From IMG/VR virus record IMGVR_UViG_3300015261_000002, positions 1 to 64,000 of that record: DNA of 64,000 nt. One strand, given 5' to 3'. A model generated the notes under the pieces. It saw only the letters and a program-made list of their open reading frames with translations, ran no database searches and was not told where the DNA came from. Shown piece by piece: positions 1 through 19,150 of this stretch. The translations under genes were made by a program, and so were the position numbers. Each line of letters opens with the position of its first letter. The stretch's first letter is position 1.

Positions 1-690
1 GCACGGGCTGAGTTCATCATCAACCCGAAGACGGGTATCCACTACGACGCTTTCACCAAAATGGATGACGACAAGAAAATCGTCTACATGGTCGGCGATA
101 TCCAGAACCGGTTGCGTCGGGCAATCAACGACATCAACAAAGTGTTCCACGACGTCAAGAACAAAACCGACATCGTGCGCATTGACGGTGCAAAGGTAAA
201 CCTCGGCGACGAGTTGGCGTTAAAGACGCAGACCAAAGAGATCACGCAATTCGGTCTCTACCTTGATCGCATCCTCACCGAGGAAACCTCGTTCTACAAG
301 GACGAGTTGATCAAGTATGCGGCAGACGCGTTGGAAGGTTGTCCTCGTGACAAGGTGGCGTATGTCATCCAACAGTTCCCAGCGCTCTACAACAACCCGA
401 AGAAGCCGGAGTACAAACAGTTCGCTGACGCAGTTCTTCAGCACATGTTTGAATACCTACACACCAATGGTATTAAGAAAACCAACGTGTACGACGTCTT
501 GATCAAAATGCGCGGCGCCTATGGGGCTCCTCGTAGCAAGAACGACACGGTCAAGGTTATCCGAACCCTTGGTGACGAGATCGTCAAAGAACGAACGGGC
601 GTTAAAACCCAACAAACCGTGCAACTGGTACGTACCGCGCTGTGTCTCTACATCGTGCTGCGTATCCTGAGCAAGGATTATTTTGAGTAA
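1..690 (+). CDS. Conserved jumbo-phage hypothetical protein, 5'-truncated by the window edge
   Basis: Frame 1 is open from base 1 (ARAEFIINPK...) to TAA at 690 and has phage-like codon usage. No function recognised. Confidence 0.8.
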   Translation, partial: ARAEFIINPKTGIHYDAFTKMDDDKKIVYMVGDIQNRLRRAINDINKVFHDVKNKTDIVRIDGAKVNLGDELALKTQTKEITQFGLYLDRILTEETSFYKDELIKYAADALEGCPRDKVAYVIQQFPALYNNPKKPEYKQFADAVLQHMFEYLHTNGIKKTNVYDVLIKMRGAYGAPRSKNDTVKVIRTLGDEIVKERTGVKTQQTVQLVRTALCLYIVLRILSKDYFE

Positions 691-701
691 GGAGTGTTTC
701 A

Positions 702-1268
702 ATGCATTACTTTAACGTGGATGGTCAGAACGAGCTGACGGTAGCCGCTGCCCTGCACCAGATCAAAGACAAGCTTACCCTCGAAGGCAAGACTGTTGCT
801 ATCTGTTCGGACGTTGGTGTGGGATCCGACGCTCTGATGCAAGACCGCGATCTCTGGATGGCCATCACCCACCCCGACAAGAGCAACGAAGAAAAGATCG
901 TCGCCCTTCTTGAGGCACGTTCAAAGTTCTACAAAGAAACCCTACTCCCCGCCCTCAGTCAATACGAAATTGTGTTGGTAAAGGGCGGGTTGATTCATGA
1001 CATGCGTTGGATGGATTACCGCTCGGACTCTTTCCAAACTGTCTTGAAAGAAAACCTGGAGATGTTACAATCCCTGGGTGGTGTCGCTTATCCAGCGGGA
1101 GTAATCCTTGTGAAAGGAGTGGATGAGATCGACTTGACTGAAGGTTACACCGAGCTATTCGAAACACGGGCTCAACGTATGGGCGACGCCATGTCTCGTT
1201 TCAAGTACGTACAGTACGAGTTTGGTAACGGGGGTCGCTCTGATGTGAGCATGCTTCTCAACTCTTAA
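702..1268 (+). CDS. Degenerate thymidylate-kinase-fold protein lacking the P-loop
   Basis: RBS AAGGAG. Aligns by eye to the Tmk at 18350-19150 (ALLEARSKFYKETLLPAL vs ALLFNAARAENIKDVIRPAL), but GxxGxGKT and DR motifs are absent. Confidence 0.6.
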   Translation: MHYFNVDGQNELTVAAALHQIKDKLTLEGKTVAICSDVGVGSDALMQDRDLWMAITHPDKSNEEKIVALLEARSKFYKETLLPALSQYEIVLVKGGLIHDMRWMDYRSDSFQTVLKENLEMLQSLGGVAYPAGVILVKGVDEIDLTEGYTELFETRAQRMGDAMSRFKYVQYEFGNGGRSDVSMLLNS

Positions 1269-1284
1269 CACACGGAGACCAGCC

Positions 1285-1716
1285 ATGGTTCTTCAACACT
1301 TCGTAGGAACGAAAATCGTTAAGTCAAAACCAATGACAAGATTGGTGTACTGCGATTACAGAGGCTGGGAACTCCCAGCCGATGAAGATGGCTCTGATGA
1401 AGGCTATTTGGTCGAATACCTGGACGGCGGGAAACCTAACCATCCGGACCACGAAGGTTATATCTCCTGGGCGCCCAAGGAACAGCATGAAAATGCTTAC
1501 CTGTGTATGGGCAACCTGGGTACGTATACCCCGGCTCAACAAAAGTTGTTTGCACAAAAAGCTCAGCTGGAATACCAAATCAAATCACTTCGCCAAGAGA
1601 TCAAGGAAGTCGACGAGGTTCTCGTGACGACCTGGGAAGTGCAGCTGATGGAAACGCAGTTGGCTTACATGGAAGCACAATTAAACGTGCTGACGGAACG
1701 GACGGAGTGGTTCTGA
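1285..1716 (+). CDS. Two-domain phage protein: GTK..PM..GYLVEY..GYxSWxPK domain plus crAss001_48-like helical C-terminus
   Basis: RBS GGAG. Motif recognised from phage proteins often fused to DUF2829. Confidence 0.6.
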   Translation: MVLQHFVGTKIVKSKPMTRLVYCDYRGWELPADEDGSDEGYLVEYLDGGKPNHPDHEGYISWAPKEQHENAYLCMGNLGTYTPAQQKLFAQKAQLEYQIKSLRQEIKEVDEVLVTTWEVQLMETQLAYMEAQLNVLTERTEWF

Positions 1717-1818: not shown

Positions 1819-2502
1819 ATGTCTGTCGACATCAGCAACTTTCTCATTGCCACACCGCTACCGGTCTCCATCACCAATCCGGTCGCCCTTGAAATCCCAG
1901 GCCTCGAAGCCCTGGAACGCTGTCCTGAAGTGATTCGCTTACTGGAGGATGGATCTCTTCAGATGTCTGCTTTAACGCTGGGAGCATCGAGTAAGAGCGT
2001 TAAGCGTACCCGCTGTGAATGGAAAGAGTCCGAGTACTGGTCTCTGGGTAGTGCGGACCGTCATTGGAGCCGCCAAGAAATGATCCTGGAAAAGGTCAAT
2101 GCTGCCCAAAAGGTGGTCATTGGTCAGATCCATGTCAAGAACGCTAACACCCCGCCTCTGAAGGTGTTCTGGAACCGGGGCAATATCACGGTAGGCTTCC
2201 GAGCCAGCTACGATAAACCCGATATCAAAAACTTCACTGTTCATGCAGGCGTTCCTCTGGGCGCCAAGTTCAAACTGAACATCGGGGTTACCCGAGCGGG
2301 TAAAGTGCAGATCAATGGTACTTGCAACGGGGTGGCATTCGAACCGTGCAATCTGCAAATGAACTACTCCTGGCAAAGACAGCTGCTGCAATTCCACGGC
2401 GGCGTCTACAACCAGGTTGATTACTCCGATGAAACCGCAGCCGATGATGGGTCGGTGTGCGTTATCAAAGCGCTGACTGTTTCACACAGTTCCGTCGAGT
2501 AG
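1819..2502 (+). CDS. Polysaccharide lyase family 7 (alginate-lyase-like)
   Basis: PL7 motifs RTRCEWKE (RxELR-like), VIGQIH and FHGGVYNQ (YFKAGxYxQ-like). Confidence 0.85.
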   Translation: MSVDISNFLIATPLPVSITNPVALEIPGLEALERCPEVIRLLEDGSLQMSALTLGASSKSVKRTRCEWKESEYWSLGSADRHWSRQEMILEKVNAAQKVVIGQIHVKNANTPPLKVFWNRGNITVGFRASYDKPDIKNFTVHAGVPLGAKFKLNIGVTRAGKVQINGTCNGVAFEPCNLQMNYSWQRQLLQFHGGVYNQVDYSDETAADDGSVCVIKALTVSHSSVE

Positions 2503-2550: not shown

Positions 2551-5500
2551 TTACGCGCGTTTACGTTCTCGCAACATACGTTTAGCCCTTTCGAGTTTGG
2601 CGTCCTCGATAAGACTGTCCACGGTGAGGAGTTTCGCTGTTTCTGGAGGAAGCAGTTTGCTGAGCTTGTTGATCTCAGCTTCCAGACGCATCGCCAGGAT
2701 GTTGTCGTTGGTGTTCAACAGCTCATCCGTCAACTTCTGCACACGTTTCTTGATGTTGTCCATGAACGAGATAATGCTTGGATCAACTTCAGGAGCGCTC
2801 TTCTGCTTACCGGCGTCAAGGAGGTTACGCGTCTCCGACAACTGAATCCCGGTAGGAATCCCGTACATCGGTTTGTTTTGTCCCAACTTGATAAACCAGT
2901 ACGTCAGCAACCAGGCGATAACCAAGTCATCGTGCTGTTTACTGTCGTGGTCGATACGGTCTCCTTTCGTCTTGAGGTTGATCAACTCATCAGCCAGTCG
3001 ATCGTAGTTCAGCCCATACCCCGTTACCCCCACAGCTTCCTGAATTAAACCGTACAGGACTTCACGGGATTTAGCCGTGGTGTTAAATCCAAAGAACTGT
3101 TTGTACTTCAGGTAGAAGCTCTTACTGCGGTGAGCGAACTTGGTGTGCTGAACAGCCTCGTACTCCTTCGAATGGTTGACCGGGTCCTGGAAGATCTGGT
3201 TGTAGATCTTCGTGAACGGATCCATCCCTTTTGCCGGCAACATCACGAGGAGGTTATCGATCATGTGGTGAGCGTAGTTGCGTTCAATCACCAGCAGACT
3301 GTTTTCAAAGGTGGCCAGCATGTCCACAATGATCCCGGTTACATCATCCAGGAAAGCCAACTGATAACGTCCCACCCCAATCACCTTACCGGTTCGCATA
3401 CTGCGGATAATCAGCGTACAGGCGTCCTTGTTGATAGCCGATGAGGTATCCACCCCAATGAGGAAGAAGTCGTTATGGCTCTTCTTCGCCATCTCCAGCA
3501 GTTCTTGCTGCGTGACAAAGAAGTCTACAAACAGACCACTGTCACGATACTCCTTACTCCACACCTTATCCCGCTTCACGTTGTTGATCGCTTCACGGGT
3601 GATGTCGTCGAACACACGGTTCTCACCGTCTTCAACCCACATCAACAGCAAGTCGATCTTAGCCTTAGCCAAACTGAGGTTCAGGCTGTCAATCGTTTCA
3701 CGGACCCAGGCTTTGTCCTTGCCGAGTTGCAGGTAGTTATACACCAAGGCCACAGACGGTGACGTGGTCTTCTTCGGAGACGCTTTCAGCAATCGCATCT
3801 TCAGATGGCTTTCGCTGTAGGAGTCAAAGAACTTCTCACGCCACTCGGTCGACGTCATCAGCTTCTCAAACATGAACTCACCGCTTGGGTGAAGGGTCGT
3901 GTTTGGTGTCGTGATGTAACTGATCCCGTAAGGAATACCGCTGTCACGACAAATCTCCATCTCTGTCAGAGCAGAAGGAGAGCATCCGTTGATGATCGCC
4001 TCGATCCAGTTAATGTAACCTGGCTCGTCGTAGTTCGTGGTGCCTACCGTGAGACCCCGTCCAAGGTCACCTGCGGCGTCTTCACCCATCTGGGGTACCG
4101 AGATGGTCAGGGTGTTAACGTGCTCCTCCCCAAACGCTTTATACGTCAGGTAGTTACCCGCGTCCTTGTCTTTCCAGGTTGGGTTAACAAGGTACTTCGG
4201 CAAACAGGTTCGGATCTTTTTGATCGCGTCAATGAACTGAGCCCGGTTATCCGACTTCAGTGTCACAAGGTGAGACTTGTAGCCGCGCCCCATGATGTAC
4301 GTCAGCCAGAAAGCAATCACCTGTACCGATACCGTGTTGTGGGTGACCAGGAAGTCGTCAGTGACGTAGAGGTGTTCCTCGTTGTCGACTTCAATGCAGG
4401 TGCACGGTGCTTCACCGTAGTACTCGATCCGATCTACAAACAAACGGTTGTCGAATACAAACTCATCTTCAACGGTCTTGTACTTAAACAAAGCCATCGA
4501 AGCAGGAAGCGTAACCGTGAACTTACTGCCTTCCTTCAAAGCAGTGCCACCCAGTCCACGAGCGAGATACTGTACGTGACCGCCTACAAGCCTGCTGGAG
4601 GTCTTGTAGATGACACCCTCATCGCCGACTACTCCTTGGTCCAGAAACGCCTGTAACAGCAACAGGCGATCTTCCCAGGCCCCTTCCAGGTAGTCTACAG
4701 GCACCCCAAGCTCAGGATCGATAGAGATCTTCACATTCTCATCGGTCGAATGAATCTCACGACGATTACCCTTACAGACGAGTTCCAACCCTTCAGGCAG
4801 GTTCTCAACCAAGAAAGCATCGCAAGCATCCGACACCTTTTTGATCAACAGGTAACCACCAATCTGCTGAGCCCCGATCAAGGTCCCCATGACATACGGG
4901 TTGATCTTGAAGGTCTTTGCTTCTCCCTTCTCGGTCTCAATCAGTGGGAACTCAAGTTTAACCCCATCCTTGAGTTTCGTGATCATCTCGGCAGTCGTGT
5001 AGTCATCCCAGATGGGTTCGTCGTTAACCGTACGACCGTGGTCTGCCAGAGTCCACAGGTGCTCAGGCCCTGCGCTGACATAACGACCATCACTGGCATA
5101 AACACGGTACAGCCGTTTGATACCTTGAGCGTGGATACCGATAACCGTGGACTTCTTGCCGTAGCGATCGATAACCTCATCACCGGCTTGCAGATCCCCA
5201 ATCCGTCTCCAGGTCCCATCAGCCATGCGAACCTTGTCATTGTCATCCTGGTACTTGCCCTGTTGACGAGGCATGATCATGTACTGGGTGATGTGGTTCA
5301 GGTAGTTCCAGATAAAACTGATGTTCCCCCGATTCGCAAGGAACTGTCGGTCTGCCCGCAACTTACACACCTCACGGAGGAAGTACCAGAAGTTGGTCTC
5401 GCTCTCGTGCATGATCATGACTTTCTGTTCGTTTGTCAGATCGTCAGCGTAAGGGTCTACCCCGATAAGGGCCGGGTTGTTCAGTTGCAGCAGGAAGTTA

Positions 5501-5808
5501 AAGTTCTTAATCCCCTGTTGCCGAAAGATCTCAGCGGTCCGGATGAAACTGGTGTTACGGGTGGTGGTGTCAGGAATTGCACGATAACGAGCAAAGTCCT
5601 TTAGGAATCGAACGGTCTTGATCTTTGACAAACTGTCTTCATTGAAGTGAGCCATGATCAGCTCATCTTCGGTACGCTTCTCCCAGTCGACCCGGTTCTT
5701 ACGGTCGTCAATCAATTCACGTGGAAGGTTTTGTGCCCCAAGGTAATTCATGAGGTCTTTGGCAAACTTGAGCTGGCCCTCGTCTGCCGTATTCTCGGCT
5801 GTAGTCAT
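2551..5808 (-). CDS. terL: Terminase large subunit containing an intein
   Basis: After intein removal: Walker A PRQQGK|T, Walker B YDE, nuclease motif LIGVDTS. Position divergent from the sheath/tube genes matches phiKZ-like phages. ATG at 5808 preferred over GTG at 5826. Confidence 0.92.
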   Translation of the reverse strand: MTTAENTADEGQLKFAKDLMNYLGAQNLPRELIDDRKNRVDWEKRTEDELIMAHFNEDSLSKIKTVRFLKDFARYRAIPDTTTRNTSFIRTAEIFRQQGIKNFNFLLQLNNPALIGVDPYADDLTNEQKVMIMHESETNFWYFLREVCKLRADRQFLANRGNISFIWNYLNHITQYMIMPRQQGKYQDDNDKVRMADGTWRRIGDLQAGDEVIDRYGKKSTVIGIHAQGIKRLYRVYASDGRYVSAGPEHLWTLADHGRTVNDEPIWDDYTTAEMITKLKDGVKLEFPLIETEKGEAKTFKINPYVMGTLIGAQQIGGYLLIKKVSDACDAFLVENLPEGLELVCKGNRREIHSTDENVKISIDPELGVPVDYLEGAWEDRLLLLQAFLDQGVVGDEGVIYKTSSRLVGGHVQYLARGLGGTALKEGSKFTVTLPASMALFKYKTVEDEFVFDNRLFVDRIEYYGEAPCTCIEVDNEEHLYVTDDFLVTHNTVSVQVIAFWLTYIMGRGYKSHLVTLKSDNRAQFIDAIKKIRTCLPKYLVNPTWKDKDAGNYLTYKAFGEEHVNTLTISVPQMGEDAAGDLGRGLTVGTTNYDEPGYINWIEAIINGCSPSALTEMEICRDSGIPYGISYITTPNTTLHPSGEFMFEKLMTSTEWREKFFDSYSESHLKMRLLKASPKKTTSPSVALVYNYLQLGKDKAWVRETIDSLNLSLAKAKIDLLLMWVEDGENRVFDDITREAINNVKRDKVWSKEYRDSGLFVDFFVTQQELLEMAKKSHNDFFLIGVDTSSAINKDACTLIIRSMRTGKVIGVGRYQLAFLDDVTGIIVDMLATFENSLLVIERNYAHHMIDNLLVMLPAKGMDPFTKIYNQIFQDPVNHSKEYEAVQHTKFAHRSKSFYLKYKQFFGFNTTAKSREVLYGLIQEAVGVTGYGLNYDRLADELINLKTKGDRIDHDSKQHDDLVIAWLLTYWFIKLGQNKPMYGIPTGIQLSETRNLLDAGKQKSAPEVDPSIISFMDNIKKRVQKLTDELLNTNDNILAMRLEAEINKLSKLLPPETAKLLTVDSLIEDAKLERAKRMLRERKRA
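4336..5253 (-). mobile_element. 306-aa class-3-type intein (Tyr1) with degenerate LAGLIDADG remnants
   Basis: YQDDNDKVRMADG...IGDL...EHLW...CTCIEVD...VTHN|T, inserted between K and T of Walker A. Confidence 0.9.
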
Positions 5809-5848
5809 GATAGGTTCCCATTGCACATCAAAAAATAAAAGATACTCG

Positions 5849-6160: not shown

Positions 6161-7882
6161 TTAAGGCGCCAACTCCACGGTTACACCGGTCATGCCCAGT
6201 TGCAACTCAACGCCAGAGACGTCTTTGTTGATCCAGTTGACGTACCACGTCTTGCCCTTTTGCATGGCAATGGTGATCGCATTGGTCTGGTTCCAGGCTG
6301 TAATCGGGAACCGCCATTTACGGCCATCTTCATGCATCAGGTCGAAGTGAGTCGCCACCGGCGCCTTGTCTTCGTTGAAGATGTCGTAGCTTGGGTAGAT
6401 CGACCAGTACATCACGTTCAGCCACTCGTCGATGTGATCCTGACCGTTAGCAATGGTAAACGTGGTGTTAGCCCCGTTGTTCTTCGCCACGACATTCAAC
6501 GCCGTGTAGGCTGGCTTGCCGTAGGAGTAGTTGACACTCCAACGCTTGCCTGGACCGTTTACATCTTTCAACAACACAATCTCGGTGTGCTGAATGAACG
6601 GCACACTTTCATACGTCTGAGCGACGTCTTTGAGGTTGATGTTGAAGATGAGTGCCTGCGACAGACCATACGACGACGGTTTGTAGACCGGGCTCTTGTC
6701 GTTATAGGTAACCACCGCAGTAACGTCGGTAAACGTCTTGCGATCGAGGTCGTACAGGAAGTGCTGCAAACGGTAACCGTTGAGCGACGCATCCCATTGA
6801 GGGTAGGTGAAGATCCGTGGGCTGTAAGCACCCTTGGCTGCACCGGCCTCGAAGGTGTAGGTGTGTCGGGCAAAGTTCGGGTTACCCGGCTGAGCGACGT
6901 CATGCTGCTCGTTCGGGGCCAGTTTCTTGATCAACACCACGTCAGCACTTTGACCTGGGAACTTCGGACGGTATTCGTTAACGCCATGCAGCGTGTACTC
7001 ACCACCGTTGACCGGACCAGGTTCAGAAGTCGAACCGTCAGAGTAATGCGTAACCGCTCGCAGTTCGACAGACGACAGTTGAACGTTGACCGGAATGATC
7101 AGACGATCGCGATCGCTCACATGAGTGAACCATGGCGACAGCAGTTCCACACCGGTGACGTACTTGACGCCGATGTTGTGGTCTTTCATGTACGCCGAAT
7201 GCTGAACCATCAAAGGCTGAGCAGGCGGGATGAACGTTTCGCCATCGAAGAACACCAGCCAAGCACGCGTGCCATCCGGCAGAGCGAGTTCGTTCTTCGT
7301 TACGCTGAACGCACCGGTCGTCATGATCGACTTGTTCGTGTACTCGTTGATCAAGGCCAACTTAACCGGAACGGTCTTGCTGATCATGTTCATCGATTGG
7401 TCGTACTGAGCCGAGATGATGTTACCCTCGACAGCGGCATTACCCAGGTATACGAATGCATGGGTAGCACCCGGACGCATGATCGTCGCATCCACACGCG
7501 CCACGTTAGGGCGTACGGAGTAGTCGATCGACAGCAGAGCTTCACCGGCCATTGGACCACCACGGAGACCGTAGATGTAGTCCTGGTCGGTGGTGTTACC
7601 TTCGTCAACGTTGGTCAGGCGCCAAGGCACCAGGGTCGACTTCAGGGTAGCCTGCCAGTCCACTTTGGCAACGAGGTAAATCATGCCGTTAGGAGGATCA
7701 AACACCAGCTCCCCTTCCTGGGGCACAACGTACTTGGTCAGATCACTTGGTGGATGGACGTCTGGATCATAAATGTTCCAGAGGTAGTGGAAGTTTTTGC
7801 GTTCACCGGTGTTGAGGGGATGGATGTTCGTCCCCGCAACCGCAGCAATCGCGTTAGACAACGGCGACTGGTCAAACAGCAT
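6161..7882 (-). CDS. Virion structural protein (phiKZ gp26-like by synteny)
   Basis: 573-aa beta-rich ORF next to the terminase in the conserved block. Confidence 0.7.
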   Translation of the reverse strand: MLFDQSPLSNAIAAVAGTNIHPLNTGERKNFHYLWNIYDPDVHPPSDLTKYVVPQEGELVFDPPNGMIYLVAKVDWQATLKSTLVPWRLTNVDEGNTTDQDYIYGLRGGPMAGEALLSIDYSVRPNVARVDATIMRPGATHAFVYLGNAAVEGNIISAQYDQSMNMISKTVPVKLALINEYTNKSIMTTGAFSVTKNELALPDGTRAWLVFFDGETFIPPAQPLMVQHSAYMKDHNIGVKYVTGVELLSPWFTHVSDRDRLIIPVNVQLSSVELRAVTHYSDGSTSEPGPVNGGEYTLHGVNEYRPKFPGQSADVVLIKKLAPNEQHDVAQPGNPNFARHTYTFEAGAAKGAYSPRIFTYPQWDASLNGYRLQHFLYDLDRKTFTDVTAVVTYNDKSPVYKPSSYGLSQALIFNINLKDVAQTYESVPFIQHTEIVLLKDVNGPGKRWSVNYSYGKPAYTALNVVAKNNGANTTFTIANGQDHIDEWLNVMYWSIYPSYDIFNEDKAPVATHFDLMHEDGRKWRFPITAWNQTNAITIAMQKGKTWYVNWINKDVSGVELQLGMTGVTVELAP

Positions 7883-18349: not shown

Positions 18350-19150
18350 TTATGCGTCTTCAGCGGGAGTTGGATACGGCGCTGTTGCTGTCGCAAATTC
18401 ACGACTGGAGACACGTTGAGTAGGAGTGTCCGATACAACAAGATTGCCCAAAGTCTTTTGGTGCCGTTCCAAAAGACTGTCCACAGTTGGAACTACTTCG
18501 GGAACCGGACGTTGCTTCATCTTGTCGATGACCTTCATCAACTCAGGCATGATCTGTGCATACACCTGGTCTGGGTTTACCTCGGCATTTACCAGCACGT
18601 AACGCCCGTCGTGAATCCGGAACTTGGTTAGGTTCACATAGTTCCAACGAGCCACATTCAACTTTTCCATCGCCATGGAATCAAATTGATCGCGTGCCAT
18701 TTCCTCTGGGGAGATGCGTTTCTGAAAGATAGCAGGGTCACCATCCAGCAGGAACGTAATGTCCGGAAAGAAGTCACCATGCACGGCGTGGTGAAGATCC
18801 AGGAGTTTCTTCAGCCCCGCATCATGCTGGAAAGCAAACGTCGAATCGCAGAAACGATCACACAGTACAACTTTACCTTCTTGCAATGCTGGTCTGATAA
18901 CGTCTTTGATGTTCTCTGCCCGCGCGGCATTGAACAGTAACGCTACTGTTGTCGGATCCAGTTTACCTGGATTGCCCGGAATACCTTCACGACACAGCTT
19001 ACGCAGGTACTCAGCCGCAAAGGTACCGCCTGGCTCACGAGTACGCACGTACGGCACGTTGGCTTGTTGCAGTTGCGCTTCCATACGGTCCAGCACTGTG
19101 GTCTTACCAGAGCCCCCTAGCCCTTCTACAACGATTAACTGTCCTTTCAT
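18350..19150 (-). CDS. tmk: Thymidylate (dTMP) kinase
   Basis: VEGLGGSGKTT P-loop, TREPGG, LCDRF and PDITFLLD motifs. Confidence 0.95.
   Translation of the reverse strand: MKGQLIVVEGLGGSGKTTVLDRMEAQLQQANVPYVRTREPGGTFAAEYLRKLCREGIPGNPGKLDPTTVALLFNAARAENIKDVIRPALQEGKVVLCDRFCDSTFAFQHDAGLKKLLDLHHAVHGDFFPDITFLLDGDPAIFQKRISPEEMARDQFDSMAMEKLNVARWNYVNLTKFRIHDGRYVLVNAEVNPDQVYAQIMPELMKVIDKMKQRPVPEVVPTVDSLLERHQKTLGNLVVSDTPTQRVSSREFATATAPYPTPAEDA

What the first reader, a model, noticed from the sequence alone, without database searches (positions are those of the whole stretch)
702..1268. Catalytically dead paralogue of thymidylate kinase
Seen: the protein aligns along its length with the window's intact Tmk (FNVDGQNELTVAA vs IVVEGLGGSGKTT; LLPALSQYEIVLVKG vs IRPALQEGKVVLCDR; YPAGVILVKG vs FPDITFLLDG). 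The P-loop GKT and the DR motif are gone, yet the ORF is intact with a good RBS. Inference: a repurposed pseudokinase, such as a nucleotide binder, a dominant-negative partner of dimeric Tmk, or a decoy against nucleotide-sensing defence.
Basis: partly seen in the sequence, partly recalled or inferred. Interest (0 to 1): 0.62.

Follow-up and report, generated by a model that had tools for sequence, protein, structure and literature searches.

The report
Dead thymidylate-kinase copy in jumbo phage
A jumbo phage keeps, next to its working thymidylate kinase, a second copy that has the kinase fold but has lost every part needed to transfer phosphate; selection still preserves it in a whole clade of related phages, so it must now do some other, still unknown job.

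Summary
ORF 702-1268 (+, 188 aa, AGGAG 7 nt upstream) is a real gene. A family-only AlphaFold model (pLDDT 89) matches only thymidylate kinases (Tmk): VIA-align Z 16.6, 169/188 residues aligned, top 50 PDB entries all Tmk. A profile search of 1.8 billion proteins, hhalign (95%) and BLASTP to Erwinia phage Joad gp6 (E 3e-8) show homology.

The kinase machinery is gone in all 20 family members. There is no Walker A (0/20, against 24/25 true Tmks). The Asp-Arg pair after strand 3 is replaced by x-Gly. The thymine-reading Gln is lost. A 17-19-residue deletion removes the LID and its Arg.

The gene is not decaying. dN/dS is 0.08-0.20, its slot beside the terminase is fixed, and 11 of 11 genomes also carry one intact Tmk. 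Its nearest active relatives are the Joad gp6/P0011 type of Tmk, not the co-resident Tmk, and the co-resident Tmk has been swapped in place between close phages.

It is therefore a conserved, previously undescribed Tmk-derived pseudoenzyme. What it does is inferred only: most likely non-catalytic binding at a remodelled acceptor site. Interest is moderate.

The parts
690..694 (+). Shine-Dalgarno AGGAG. It overlaps the last base of the upstream gene's TAA stop (688-690) and lies 7 nt before the ATG.
   Evidence: Read directly from the sequence.
702..1268 (+). CDS of the Tmk-derived pseudoenzyme (188 aa plus TAA). It is single-copy in the 224,747-bp genome.
   Evidence: AF2 pLDDT 89.1, pTM 0.87. 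The fold matches only Tmks.
723..749 (+). Degenerate P-loop (residues G8-A16), aligned to Tmk G10-T18. The Walker A Gly15, Lys16 and Thr17 positions are T, V and A here.
   Evidence: Lys is absent in 20/20 members and the Walker A pattern is found in 0/20. The segment is conserved at 0.59x the family mean, one of the two least conserved elements, against 1.27x the mean in Tmks.
810..812 (+). Asp37, invariant in the family, at the position of the invariant Glu of the Tmk (T)REPGG loop. The rest of that loop is lost.
918..920 (+). Arg73, invariant (20/20), equivalent to the invariant Tmk Arg77 in helix 3. The role of that Arg in binding the dTMP phosphate is taken from my own knowledge of Tmk structures.
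   Evidence: The equivalence is the same in every alignment tried.
981..1013 (+). Segment after strand 3 (K94-M104). K94-G95 replace Asp-Arg, and G95-G96 and D100 are (nearly) invariant new residues. W103 keeps the aromatic of Tmk's Y/F-Q pair, but M104 replaces the Gln.
   Evidence: Joint MAFFT alignment, BLASTP to Joad gp6 and column counts. hhalign's gapped alternative is disfavoured.
1032..1100 (+). Family signature F111-G133: helix 5, a loop and the start of strand 4, with the motif ILKENxEMLQSxGGxAYPxG. It is the most conserved part of the family.
   Evidence: Conservation is 1.47x and 1.34x the family mean, against 0.85x and 0.98x in Tmks. A weaker form is present in Joad gp6 and P0011 only.
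1113..1118 (+). Site (K138|G139) of the 17-19-residue deletion, relative to all Tmks, that removes helix 7 and the LID with its invariant Arg.
   Evidence: Joint alignment. The span between strands 4 and 5 is 28 aa, against 45 aa in the window's Tmk.
18350..19150 (-). The co-resident intact thymidylate kinase (266 aa, Walker A GLGGSGKT, DR motif present).
   Evidence: PF02223 1.6e-31, TIGR00041 1e-36.

Best explanation
The gene encodes a pseudoenzyme. It is a 188-aa protein with a thymidylate-kinase fold, and it descends from the divergent Tmk type seen in Erwinia phage Joad/RisingSun gp6 and in P0011. It has lost all the elements a Tmk uses to move phosphate from ATP to dTMP: the Walker A loop with its Lys and Thr, the Asp-Arg pair after strand 3, the Gln that reads thymine, and, through a 17-19-residue deletion, the LID with its Arg.

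It is the window's member of an orthologous family of at least 20 proteins, so far found only in uncultured phiKZ-like jumbo phages on contigs of up to about 215-235 kb. In each genome examined it is single-copy and sits in the same slot beside the terminase. Every genome that carries it also has a separate intact Tmk about 17 kb away. It evolves under purifying selection. It is therefore not a kinase and not a decaying gene; it has a maintained non-kinase role.

How it works is inference only. Constraint has moved from the ATP site to helix 3, to the helix 5-loop-strand 4 signature, and to a few residues on the strand-end crest where Tmk binds dTMP (D37, R73, the new G95-G96, D100). I think the most likely mechanism is binding without turnover of a phosphate-bearing, nucleotide-like ligand at this remodelled acceptor site, acting as a sensor or sequestering protein in the cytoplasm. 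A protein-binding scaffold role comes close behind.

My odds: Tmk-derived fold and homology 0.95; no kinase activity 0.85; a selected function 0.9; the specific ligand-binding mechanism about 0.35.
For: Fold: an AF2 model built from a family-only alignment has pLDDT 89.1. Foldseek against PDB returns Tmks for all top 50 hits, E down to 4.5e-7. VIA-align gives Z 16.6, rmsd 3.0 A, 169/188 residues aligned, and all 50 entries are Tmks. The top BFVD hits are phage dTMP kinases. The Atlas shape search gives TM 0.66-0.73. The language-model feature search gives 0.93 to Tmk clusters.

Homology.

Motif loss: Walker A is present in 0/20 family members against 24/25 Tmks, and Lys16 is replaced by A/V/T/G. 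DR is replaced by x-G, Gln by M/V/I, and the LID is deleted.

Selection: NG86 dN/dS is 0.08-0.20 at dS 0.3-1.2. Twenty intact orthologues go down to 25% identity. Gene order is conserved in divergent members.

Co-occurrence: 11/11 genomes with the family hold exactly one canonical Tmk with an intact P-loop. Joad and five other related records have one Tmk and no family member.

Shift of constraint. Retained crest residues D37 and R73 (20/20), G96 and D100 (20/20), G95 (19/20).
Against: There is no experiment. Much of the dTMP site is eroded too: the REPGG loop, the DR Arg and the Gln are lost, and the base-stacking aromatic is aliphatic in 20/20 members. D37 and R73 could therefore be kept for structural reasons only. 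The most conserved segment (residues 111-133) is not at the strand-end crest and could equally well be a protein interface.
Confidence: 0.6

Rival explanations
1. It is a regulatory or dominant-negative partner of dimeric Tmk, phage or host. The dead copy would form a heterodimer with an active Tmk and tune or block dTDP synthesis, as dead paralogues do for some other enzymes.
For: Tmks are dimers (PMC3169407). The dead copy always co-occurs with an intact Tmk (11/11). Helix 3 and the helix 5 region are its best-conserved parts. There are precedents for dead paralogues that regulate the active enzyme (PMC3663545 and PMC6395007).
Against: Between G000 and G001 the dead copy is 92% identical, while the co-resident Tmk was replaced in place by a 44%-identical allele. 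That is hard to reconcile with a co-evolved specific interface. The dead copy derives from a different Tmk subtype than the co-resident one. The two genes lie 17 kb apart on opposite strands. Co-occurrence is also expected simply because every related genome examined carries one Tmk.
Confidence: 0.12
2. It is a protein-binding scaffold or assembly factor unrelated to nucleotides. The Tmk fold would be kept only as a stable frame, and the conserved helix 5-loop surface would bind another phage protein, possibly one from the neighbouring morphogenesis block.
For: The strongest constraint is on residues 111-133, not on the former active site. The gene has a fixed place in a + strand gene string (DUF7484, phrog_2921 protein, this gene, 143-aa protein) next to the terminase, DUF7193 and a PhiKZ gp28-like vertex protein. 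Both nucleotide sites are eroded.
Against: No partner has been identified, and none of the neighbours has a known function. Part of the 111-133 motif is inherited from active gp6/P0011-type Tmks, so it may be structural. Invariant R73, D37, G96 and D100 on the ligand crest would be unexplained.
Confidence: 0.25
3. It is a counter-defence decoy or sponge. The protein would soak up a nucleotide-derived immune signal, or mimic Tmk towards a host defence that senses or attacks phage nucleotide-metabolism enzymes.
For: It is restricted to one clade, is an extra gene and has a nucleotide-enzyme fold. In Joad, the Tmk most similar to this family is followed directly by a Tad2-like anti-Thoeris sponge gene, so nucleotide metabolism and anti-defence genes do sit together in this phage group.
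Against: There is no match to defence-related models. The fixed position, strong conservation and dN/dS of about 0.1-0.2 are unlike the fast-turnover accessory islands where anti-defence genes usually lie (my own knowledge). No binding data exist.
Confidence: 0.1
4. It is still an enzyme: a phosphotransferase or other nucleotide-modifying activity that uses non-canonical residues.
For: Invariant polar residues remain (D37, R73, D100, E120, Y172). Two members (P0008, P0136) keep a K-T dipeptide in a P-loop that is one residue short.
Against: Walker A is present in 0/20 members, and the loop is one of the two least conserved segments of the family. There is no acidic residue at the end of strand 3, and the LID is deleted in all members. 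The Walker A Lys is treated as essential in P-loop kinases (my own knowledge; PMC3169407 describes the motif).
Confidence: 0.05
5. It is a decaying pseudogene or a chance ORF.
For: There is no Pfam, PHROG or NCBIfam match.
Against: dN/dS is 0.08-0.20. There are 20 full-length orthologues with a conserved start and length. The fold prediction is confident, there is a good RBS, and synteny is conserved.
Confidence: 0.01

Closest known systems
Canonical thymidylate kinase (Tmk/TMPK, PF02223, TIGR00041), for example the window's own gene at 18350-19150 and the solved M. tuberculosis, P. aeruginosa, T. thermophilus and S. aureus enzymes
   Same: The fold is the same over nearly the whole length (Z up to 16.6, 165-175 residues aligned), and the order of strands and helices matches. 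Shared conserved residues are the helix-3 Arg (R73), the Pro in helix 3 (P83), the Pro before strand 4 (P131) and the aromatic residue of the Y/F-Q pair.
   Different: The family has no Walker A, no DR, no Gln, no REPGG loop and no LID, and its C-terminus is shorter (178-188 aa against about 205-266 aa). It scores below every family-model threshold. The pattern of constraint is reversed.
Divergent active-type Tmks: Erwinia phage Joad/RisingSun gp6, and metagenomic P0011
   Same: These are the closest sequences with intact P-loops (60.6 and 45.4 bits to the family profile; BLASTP E 3e-8). They share the helix-3 motif (LEQR...LPA) and an early form of the helix-5 signature.
   Different: They keep Walker A, the Arg of DR (Joad has S-R, P0011 has D-R), Y-Q and the LID. 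They pass the Pfam threshold (76.5 and 75.6 bits). gp6 is the only Tmk in Joad.
The second thymidylate kinase homologue of onion yellows phytoplasma (Miyata et al. 2003, Microbiology 149:2243, as cited in PMC11592322)
   Same: One genome carries two Tmk homologues, and the paper's title says that one of them has catalytic activity. This is a precedent for an extra Tmk-like gene beside the working enzyme.
   Different: It is a bacterial case linked to mobile units, not a phage case. I could not read the paper, so which motifs that homologue keeps is unknown to me. There is no sequence relationship beyond the shared superfamily.
Viral and parasite pseudoenzyme paralogues: vaccinia B12 pseudokinase with B1 kinase (PMC6395007), and the trypanosomatid dead deoxyhypusine synthase paralogue (PMC3663545)
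   Same: The logic is the same: a catalytically dead paralogue kept under selection beside the active enzyme.
   Different: The folds and chemistry are unrelated. In those cases the dead copy acts on or with the active paralogue, which the Tmk allele swap seen here argues against.

Membership tests
Thymidylate kinase (EC 2.7.4.9; PF02223 / TIGR00041) | Tmk (NMP-kinase-like, five-stranded alpha/beta) fold | tested here: met
   pLDDT 89 model. Foldseek, VIA-align and the Atlas search return Tmks only or almost only.
Thymidylate kinase (EC 2.7.4.9; PF02223 / TIGR00041) | Score above the curated family-model thresholds | tested here: not met
   No PF02223 or TIGR00041 match even at E <= 1, for the target or for P0006-P0010.
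Thymidylate kinase (EC 2.7.4.9; PF02223 / TIGR00041) | Walker A P-loop GX4GK[ST] (PMC3169407) | tested here: not met
   0/20 family members against 24/25 Tmks. The Lys position holds A, V, T or G.
Thymidylate kinase (EC 2.7.4.9; PF02223 / TIGR00041) | Asp-Arg (DRY/F/H) motif at the end of strand 3 | tested here: not met
   K94-G95 here, and [KVIHA]-G across the family, in the ungapped joint alignment and in BLASTP to Joad gp6. hhalign's alternative (R102, present in 15/20) is disfavoured.
Thymidylate kinase (EC 2.7.4.9; PF02223 / TIGR00041) | LID segment carrying basic residues or the catalytic Arg (type II TMPK; PMC3169407) | tested here: not met
   A 17-19-residue deletion directly after strand 4 occurs in all members, and the invariant Arg145 column has no counterpart.
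Thymidylate kinase (EC 2.7.4.9; PF02223 / TIGR00041) | dTMP-site residues (helix-3 Arg, Y/F-Q pair, REPGG loop, stacking aromatic) | tested here: inconclusive
   The Arg is kept in 20/20 and the aromatic in 20/20. The Gln, the REPGG loop (except an Asp in place of the Glu) and the stacking aromatic are lost. No coordinates were available to test whether a pocket remains.
Thymidylate kinase (EC 2.7.4.9; PF02223 / TIGR00041) | dTMP kinase activity | not testable with these tools
   This needs an enzyme assay.
Pseudoenzyme (dead paralogue of an active enzyme) | Demonstrable homology to an active enzyme family | tested here: met
Pseudoenzyme (dead paralogue of an active enzyme) | Loss of residues required for catalysis, across the family | tested here: met
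Pseudoenzyme (dead paralogue of an active enzyme) | Maintained by purifying selection (not a pseudogene) | tested here: met
   dN/dS 0.08-0.20. Twenty intact orthologues and conserved synteny.
Pseudoenzyme (dead paralogue of an active enzyme) | An active counterpart is present in the same genome | tested here: met
   11/11 genomes.
Pseudoenzyme (dead paralogue of an active enzyme) | Absence of activity shown experimentally | not testable with these tools
   This needs purified protein.

The most novel reading that the evidence does not exclude
The family is a new kind of phage nucleotide-binding pseudoenzyme. A Tmk shell has had its ATP half dismantled, and its acceptor half has been rebuilt (R73, the new Gly-Gly after strand 3, D100) to hold a nucleotide without turning it over. 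It would act as a sponge or sensor, for a host immune signal or for thymidylate-pool intermediates, in phiKZ-like jumbo phages that encode Tmk but no thymidylate synthase.
Probability: 0.12. Interest if true: 0.8.

Novelty: new variant of a known kind. Interest (0 to 1): 0.5.

Why it matters
Dead enzyme copies that selection keeps are a recurring way for viruses and cells to make regulators, sensors and decoys. I found no description of one derived from thymidylate kinase in phages, and the family has no match in Pfam, PHROGs or NCBIfam. The present case is clean and testable: a small soluble protein, a confident model, 20 orthologues, a clear nearest active relative (Joad gp6, from a cultured Erwinia phage) and a defined list of lost and newly fixed residues. 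It also shows how the gene content of phiKZ-like phages evolves. The working Tmk behaves as a swappable cassette, while the dead copy is inherited vertically. If the protein binds a nucleotide, it could reveal a new sponge or sensor fold. If it binds a protein, it would show a metabolic fold reused as a scaffold.

Tried and rejected
- Family scans (Pfam, PHROGs, NCBIfam, PADLOC) and a PDB sequence search of the target gave nothing.
- The first AF2 run, on six near-identical sequences, was unusable (pLDDT 43). It was replaced by the 20-sequence family-only run.
- hhalign suggested a displaced D-x-R motif, that Q112 corresponds to the Tmk Gln, and that R156 corresponds to the LID Arg. I rejected these after the joint alignment and the BLASTP to Joad gp6.
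- Complex prediction of the target with the window's Tmk gave score 0.00 and no verdict. This is neither support nor evidence against.
- The genome search could not reach the ENA/JGI/Logan contigs, so I used IMG/VR records for the co-occurrence test instead.
- RisingSun genes at the equivalent slot beside the terminase show no similarity to the target or to its downstream neighbour. The flanks of Joad gp6 are not similar to the flanks of the window's Tmk, so I could not establish which locus is ancestral.
- The 'careful' tree did not finish, so only quick trees are reported. Without Joad gp6 and P0011, the attachment point of the family is unresolved (support 81).
- A literature search for the Tmk dimer-interface helices gave nothing usable, so I make no argument from the interface.

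Full report
WHAT IS THERE

The window is the first 64 kb of a complete 224,747-bp virus record with direct terminal repeats. It is a phiKZ-like jumbo phage. Its nearest cultured relatives are Erwinia phages RisingSun and Joad, with about 72% DNA identity over the terminase. It encodes a PhiKZ gp28-like vertex protein and DUF7193. A divergent, sub-threshold tubulin (PhuZ-like) lies just upstream of the window's start across the genome ends (compare).

ORF 702-1268 (+) is 188 aa. AGGAG at 690-694 lies seven nt before the ATG and overlaps the stop of the upstream gene. The next gene starts 16 nt after the ORF's stop.

IS THE SIMILARITY REAL?

The family libraries are silent on the target. The direct comparison with the window's Tmk is only marginal (E 0.008). 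Five independent lines nevertheless converge.

- The only weak tblastn hits among 50,697 phage records are Tmk genes. A divergent family member (P0009) hits the RisingSun and Joad Tmk at E 2e-5 and 1e-4.
- An exhaustive profile search of 1.8 billion proteins found five more distant family members, and then P0011 at E 9e-4. P0011 is a bona fide Tmk with an intact P-loop and DR motif.
- hhalign of the family against 25 true Tmks gives 95% probability, E 2.5e-8, over 148 columns. Without P0011 it still gives 86%.
- The target aligns to Joad gp6 at E 3e-8 over residues 6-187.
- The language-model feature search returns Tmk clusters (score 0.93, 177 shared features).

FOLD

A first model from six near-identical sequences failed (pLDDT 43). 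With 20 family members and no Tmk in the alignment, the model reached pLDDT 89.1 and pTM 0.87.

- Foldseek against PDB returned thymidylate kinases for all top 50 hits, E down to 4.5e-7.
- VIA-align gave Z 16.6, rmsd 3.0 A, 169 of 188 residues aligned, and all 50 entries are Tmks.
- The top BFVD hits are phage dTMP kinases, several from phages I recognise as jumbo phages.
- The Atlas shape search gave TM 0.66-0.73 over 171-178 residues.

WHAT HAS BEEN LOST

Column counts and a joint L-INS-i alignment of family members, Joad gp6, P0011 and canonical Tmks show the following.

- The Walker A pattern is present in 0/20 family members against 24/25 Tmks. The Lys column holds A, V, T or G.
- The P-loop is one of the two least conserved elements of the family (0.59x its mean), whereas in Tmks it is among the most conserved (1.27x).
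- The Asp-Arg pair after strand 3 is replaced by [KVIHA]-Gly, followed by an invariant second Gly.
- The Y/F-Q pair keeps its aromatic residue but loses the Gln.
- The REPGG loop is gone except for an Asp in place of the Glu.
- The stacking aromatic is aliphatic in all members.
- A 17-19-residue deletion directly after strand 4 removes the LID with its invariant Arg. The role of that Arg in type II TMPKs is described in PMC3169407.

hhalign alone had suggested a displaced D-x-R and a retained Gln and LID Arg. The ungapped alignment to the closest active relatives contradicts this, and I dropped the idea.

The following survive in all 20 members: D37, R73 (the helix-3 Arg), P83 and P131. New family-specific invariants are G96, D100, L115, E120, G126, G133 and Y172. 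The signature ILKENxEMLQSxGGxAYPxG (residues 114-133) is the most conserved part of the family (1.47x its mean, against 0.85x in Tmks).

NOT A DYING GENE

- Among close orthologues, dN/dS is 0.08-0.20 at dS 0.3-1.2. For the genuine Tmk in comparable genome pairs it is 0.04-0.08.
- Members down to 25% identity keep the length (178-188 aa), the start (M-x-Y) and the position. The gene order is DUF7484, a roughly 460-aa phrog_2921 protein, this gene, then an alginate-lyase-fold protein and the terminase, with small rearrangements.
- The gene is single-copy in its own genome.

DISTRIBUTION AND ORIGIN

The family has at least 20 clusters at 90% identity, plus 11 IMG/VR loci. All come from uncultured phages, with contigs reaching about 215-235 kb. 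No cultured phage carries a member.

Every one of the 11 virus records that hold the family also holds exactly one canonical Tmk with an intact P-loop. Joad and five other related records hold one Tmk and no family member.

In quick ML trees the family is one clade (100*) on a stem of about 4.5 substitutions per site. It is not sister to the co-resident Tmks.

The family profile scores Joad gp6 at 60.6 bits and P0011 at 45.4 bits, and all 131 other Tmks at 15 bits or less. Those two also share an early form of the helix-5 signature. I therefore take the grouping with them as real and not only long-branch attraction. The inferred history is that a gp6-type Tmk became free to lose catalysis in a lineage that also had a canonical Tmk. 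Which copy came first, and where, is not resolved.

BEARING ON MECHANISM

Between G000 and G001 the dead copy is 92% identical, but the working Tmk is only 44% identical. The flanks align at 69-90% DNA identity, while about 650 bp of the Tmk core do not align at all, so the allele was swapped in place. This argues against a co-evolved heterodimer with the co-resident Tmk. The complex prediction gave no verdict and is not used as evidence.

The phage encodes no ThyA or ThyX. In the related nucleus-forming phage Asesino, Tmk is cytoplasmic (PMC11724907).

The remaining conserved crest residues are D37, R73, G95-G96 and D100. A Gly-Gly at the end of a strand just before a helix start is a typical anion-binding geometry (my own knowledge). 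From this I infer that the most likely mechanism is binding without turnover of a phosphate-bearing, nucleotide-like ligand (about 0.35). A protein-binding scaffold is next (about 0.25). Tmk regulation (0.12), counter-defence sponge or decoy (0.10) and residual catalysis (0.05) follow.

NOVELTY AND VERDICT

I found no description of a dead Tmk paralogue in phages. The nearest precedents are the two Tmk homologues of onion yellows phytoplasma (Miyata 2003, seen only as a citation) and unrelated viral or parasite pseudoenzymes.

This is a new variant of a known kind: a pseudoenzyme family derived from Tmk. Its core interpretation is supported, and its specific functional guesses remain open, one of them weakened. 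Interest is moderate (0.5).

Noticed in passing
window 18350-19150 (-), against L025 (G001:41987-45562): The intact Tmk behaves as a swappable cassette. Between two phages whose dead copies are 92% identical, the Tmk proteins are only 44% identical. About 650 bp of the coding core have no DNA similarity, while the flanks align at 69-90%. The Tmk trees and the dead-copy distances are discordant: G001's Tmk groups with G003's.
   Followed up: partly
L002:4567-4938 (Erwinia phage Joad gp7, record 7316-7687): This gene is annotated 'putative thymidylate kinase' but is a Tad2-like Thoeris anti-defence domain (PF11195, E 3.7e-9, above the cut-off). It is probably misannotated because it lies directly after the real Tmk, gp6.
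   Followed up: partly
L002:3839-4564 (Joad gp6): Joad's only Tmk is itself unusual. It has Ser-Arg instead of Asp-Arg after strand 3 and a family-like helix-5 motif, and its PF02223 match covers only profile positions 1-146. It may be a halfway form, and it comes from a cultured phage that could be assayed.
   Followed up: partly
window 1819-2502 (+): A 227-aa protein with a full-length Alginate_lyase2 (PF08787, 2.7e-37) match, next to the terminase. Its strand and its side of the dead-Tmk gene differ among relatives: - strand in L004 and L011, upstream of the family gene in L007.
   Followed up: no
window 2551-5826 (-): A 1091-aa homologue of the RisingSun 'terminase large subunit' (which one record also annotates as an ATP-dependent helicase). 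It has no Pfam match at E <= 0.001 despite its size. Long antisense ORFs (3805-4656 and 4750-5604) lie inside it.
   Followed up: no
window 1285-1716 (+): A 143-aa protein co-transcribed after the dead Tmk. Its N-terminal half matches phrog_872, and its C-terminal coiled part weakly matches crAss001_48 (PF21825, E 7e-4, below the cut-off). It is present in close relatives but absent or replaced in divergent ones (L007, L008).
   Followed up: no
G000 whole genome; G000:C1:220146-220577 (-): The genome has no ThyA or ThyX, so the phage has a Tmk but no thymidylate synthase. A divergent tubulin (PF00091, E 1.2e-6, below the cut-off), presumably PhuZ-like, lies about 5 kb before the window's start across the genome ends.
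   Followed up: partly
window 18350-18700 (-), C-terminal part of the intact Tmk: The window's Tmk is 266 aa, about 50 aa longer than typical Tmks. The extension has no Pfam match, and its length varies among co-resident Tmks (217-264 aa).
   Followed up: no
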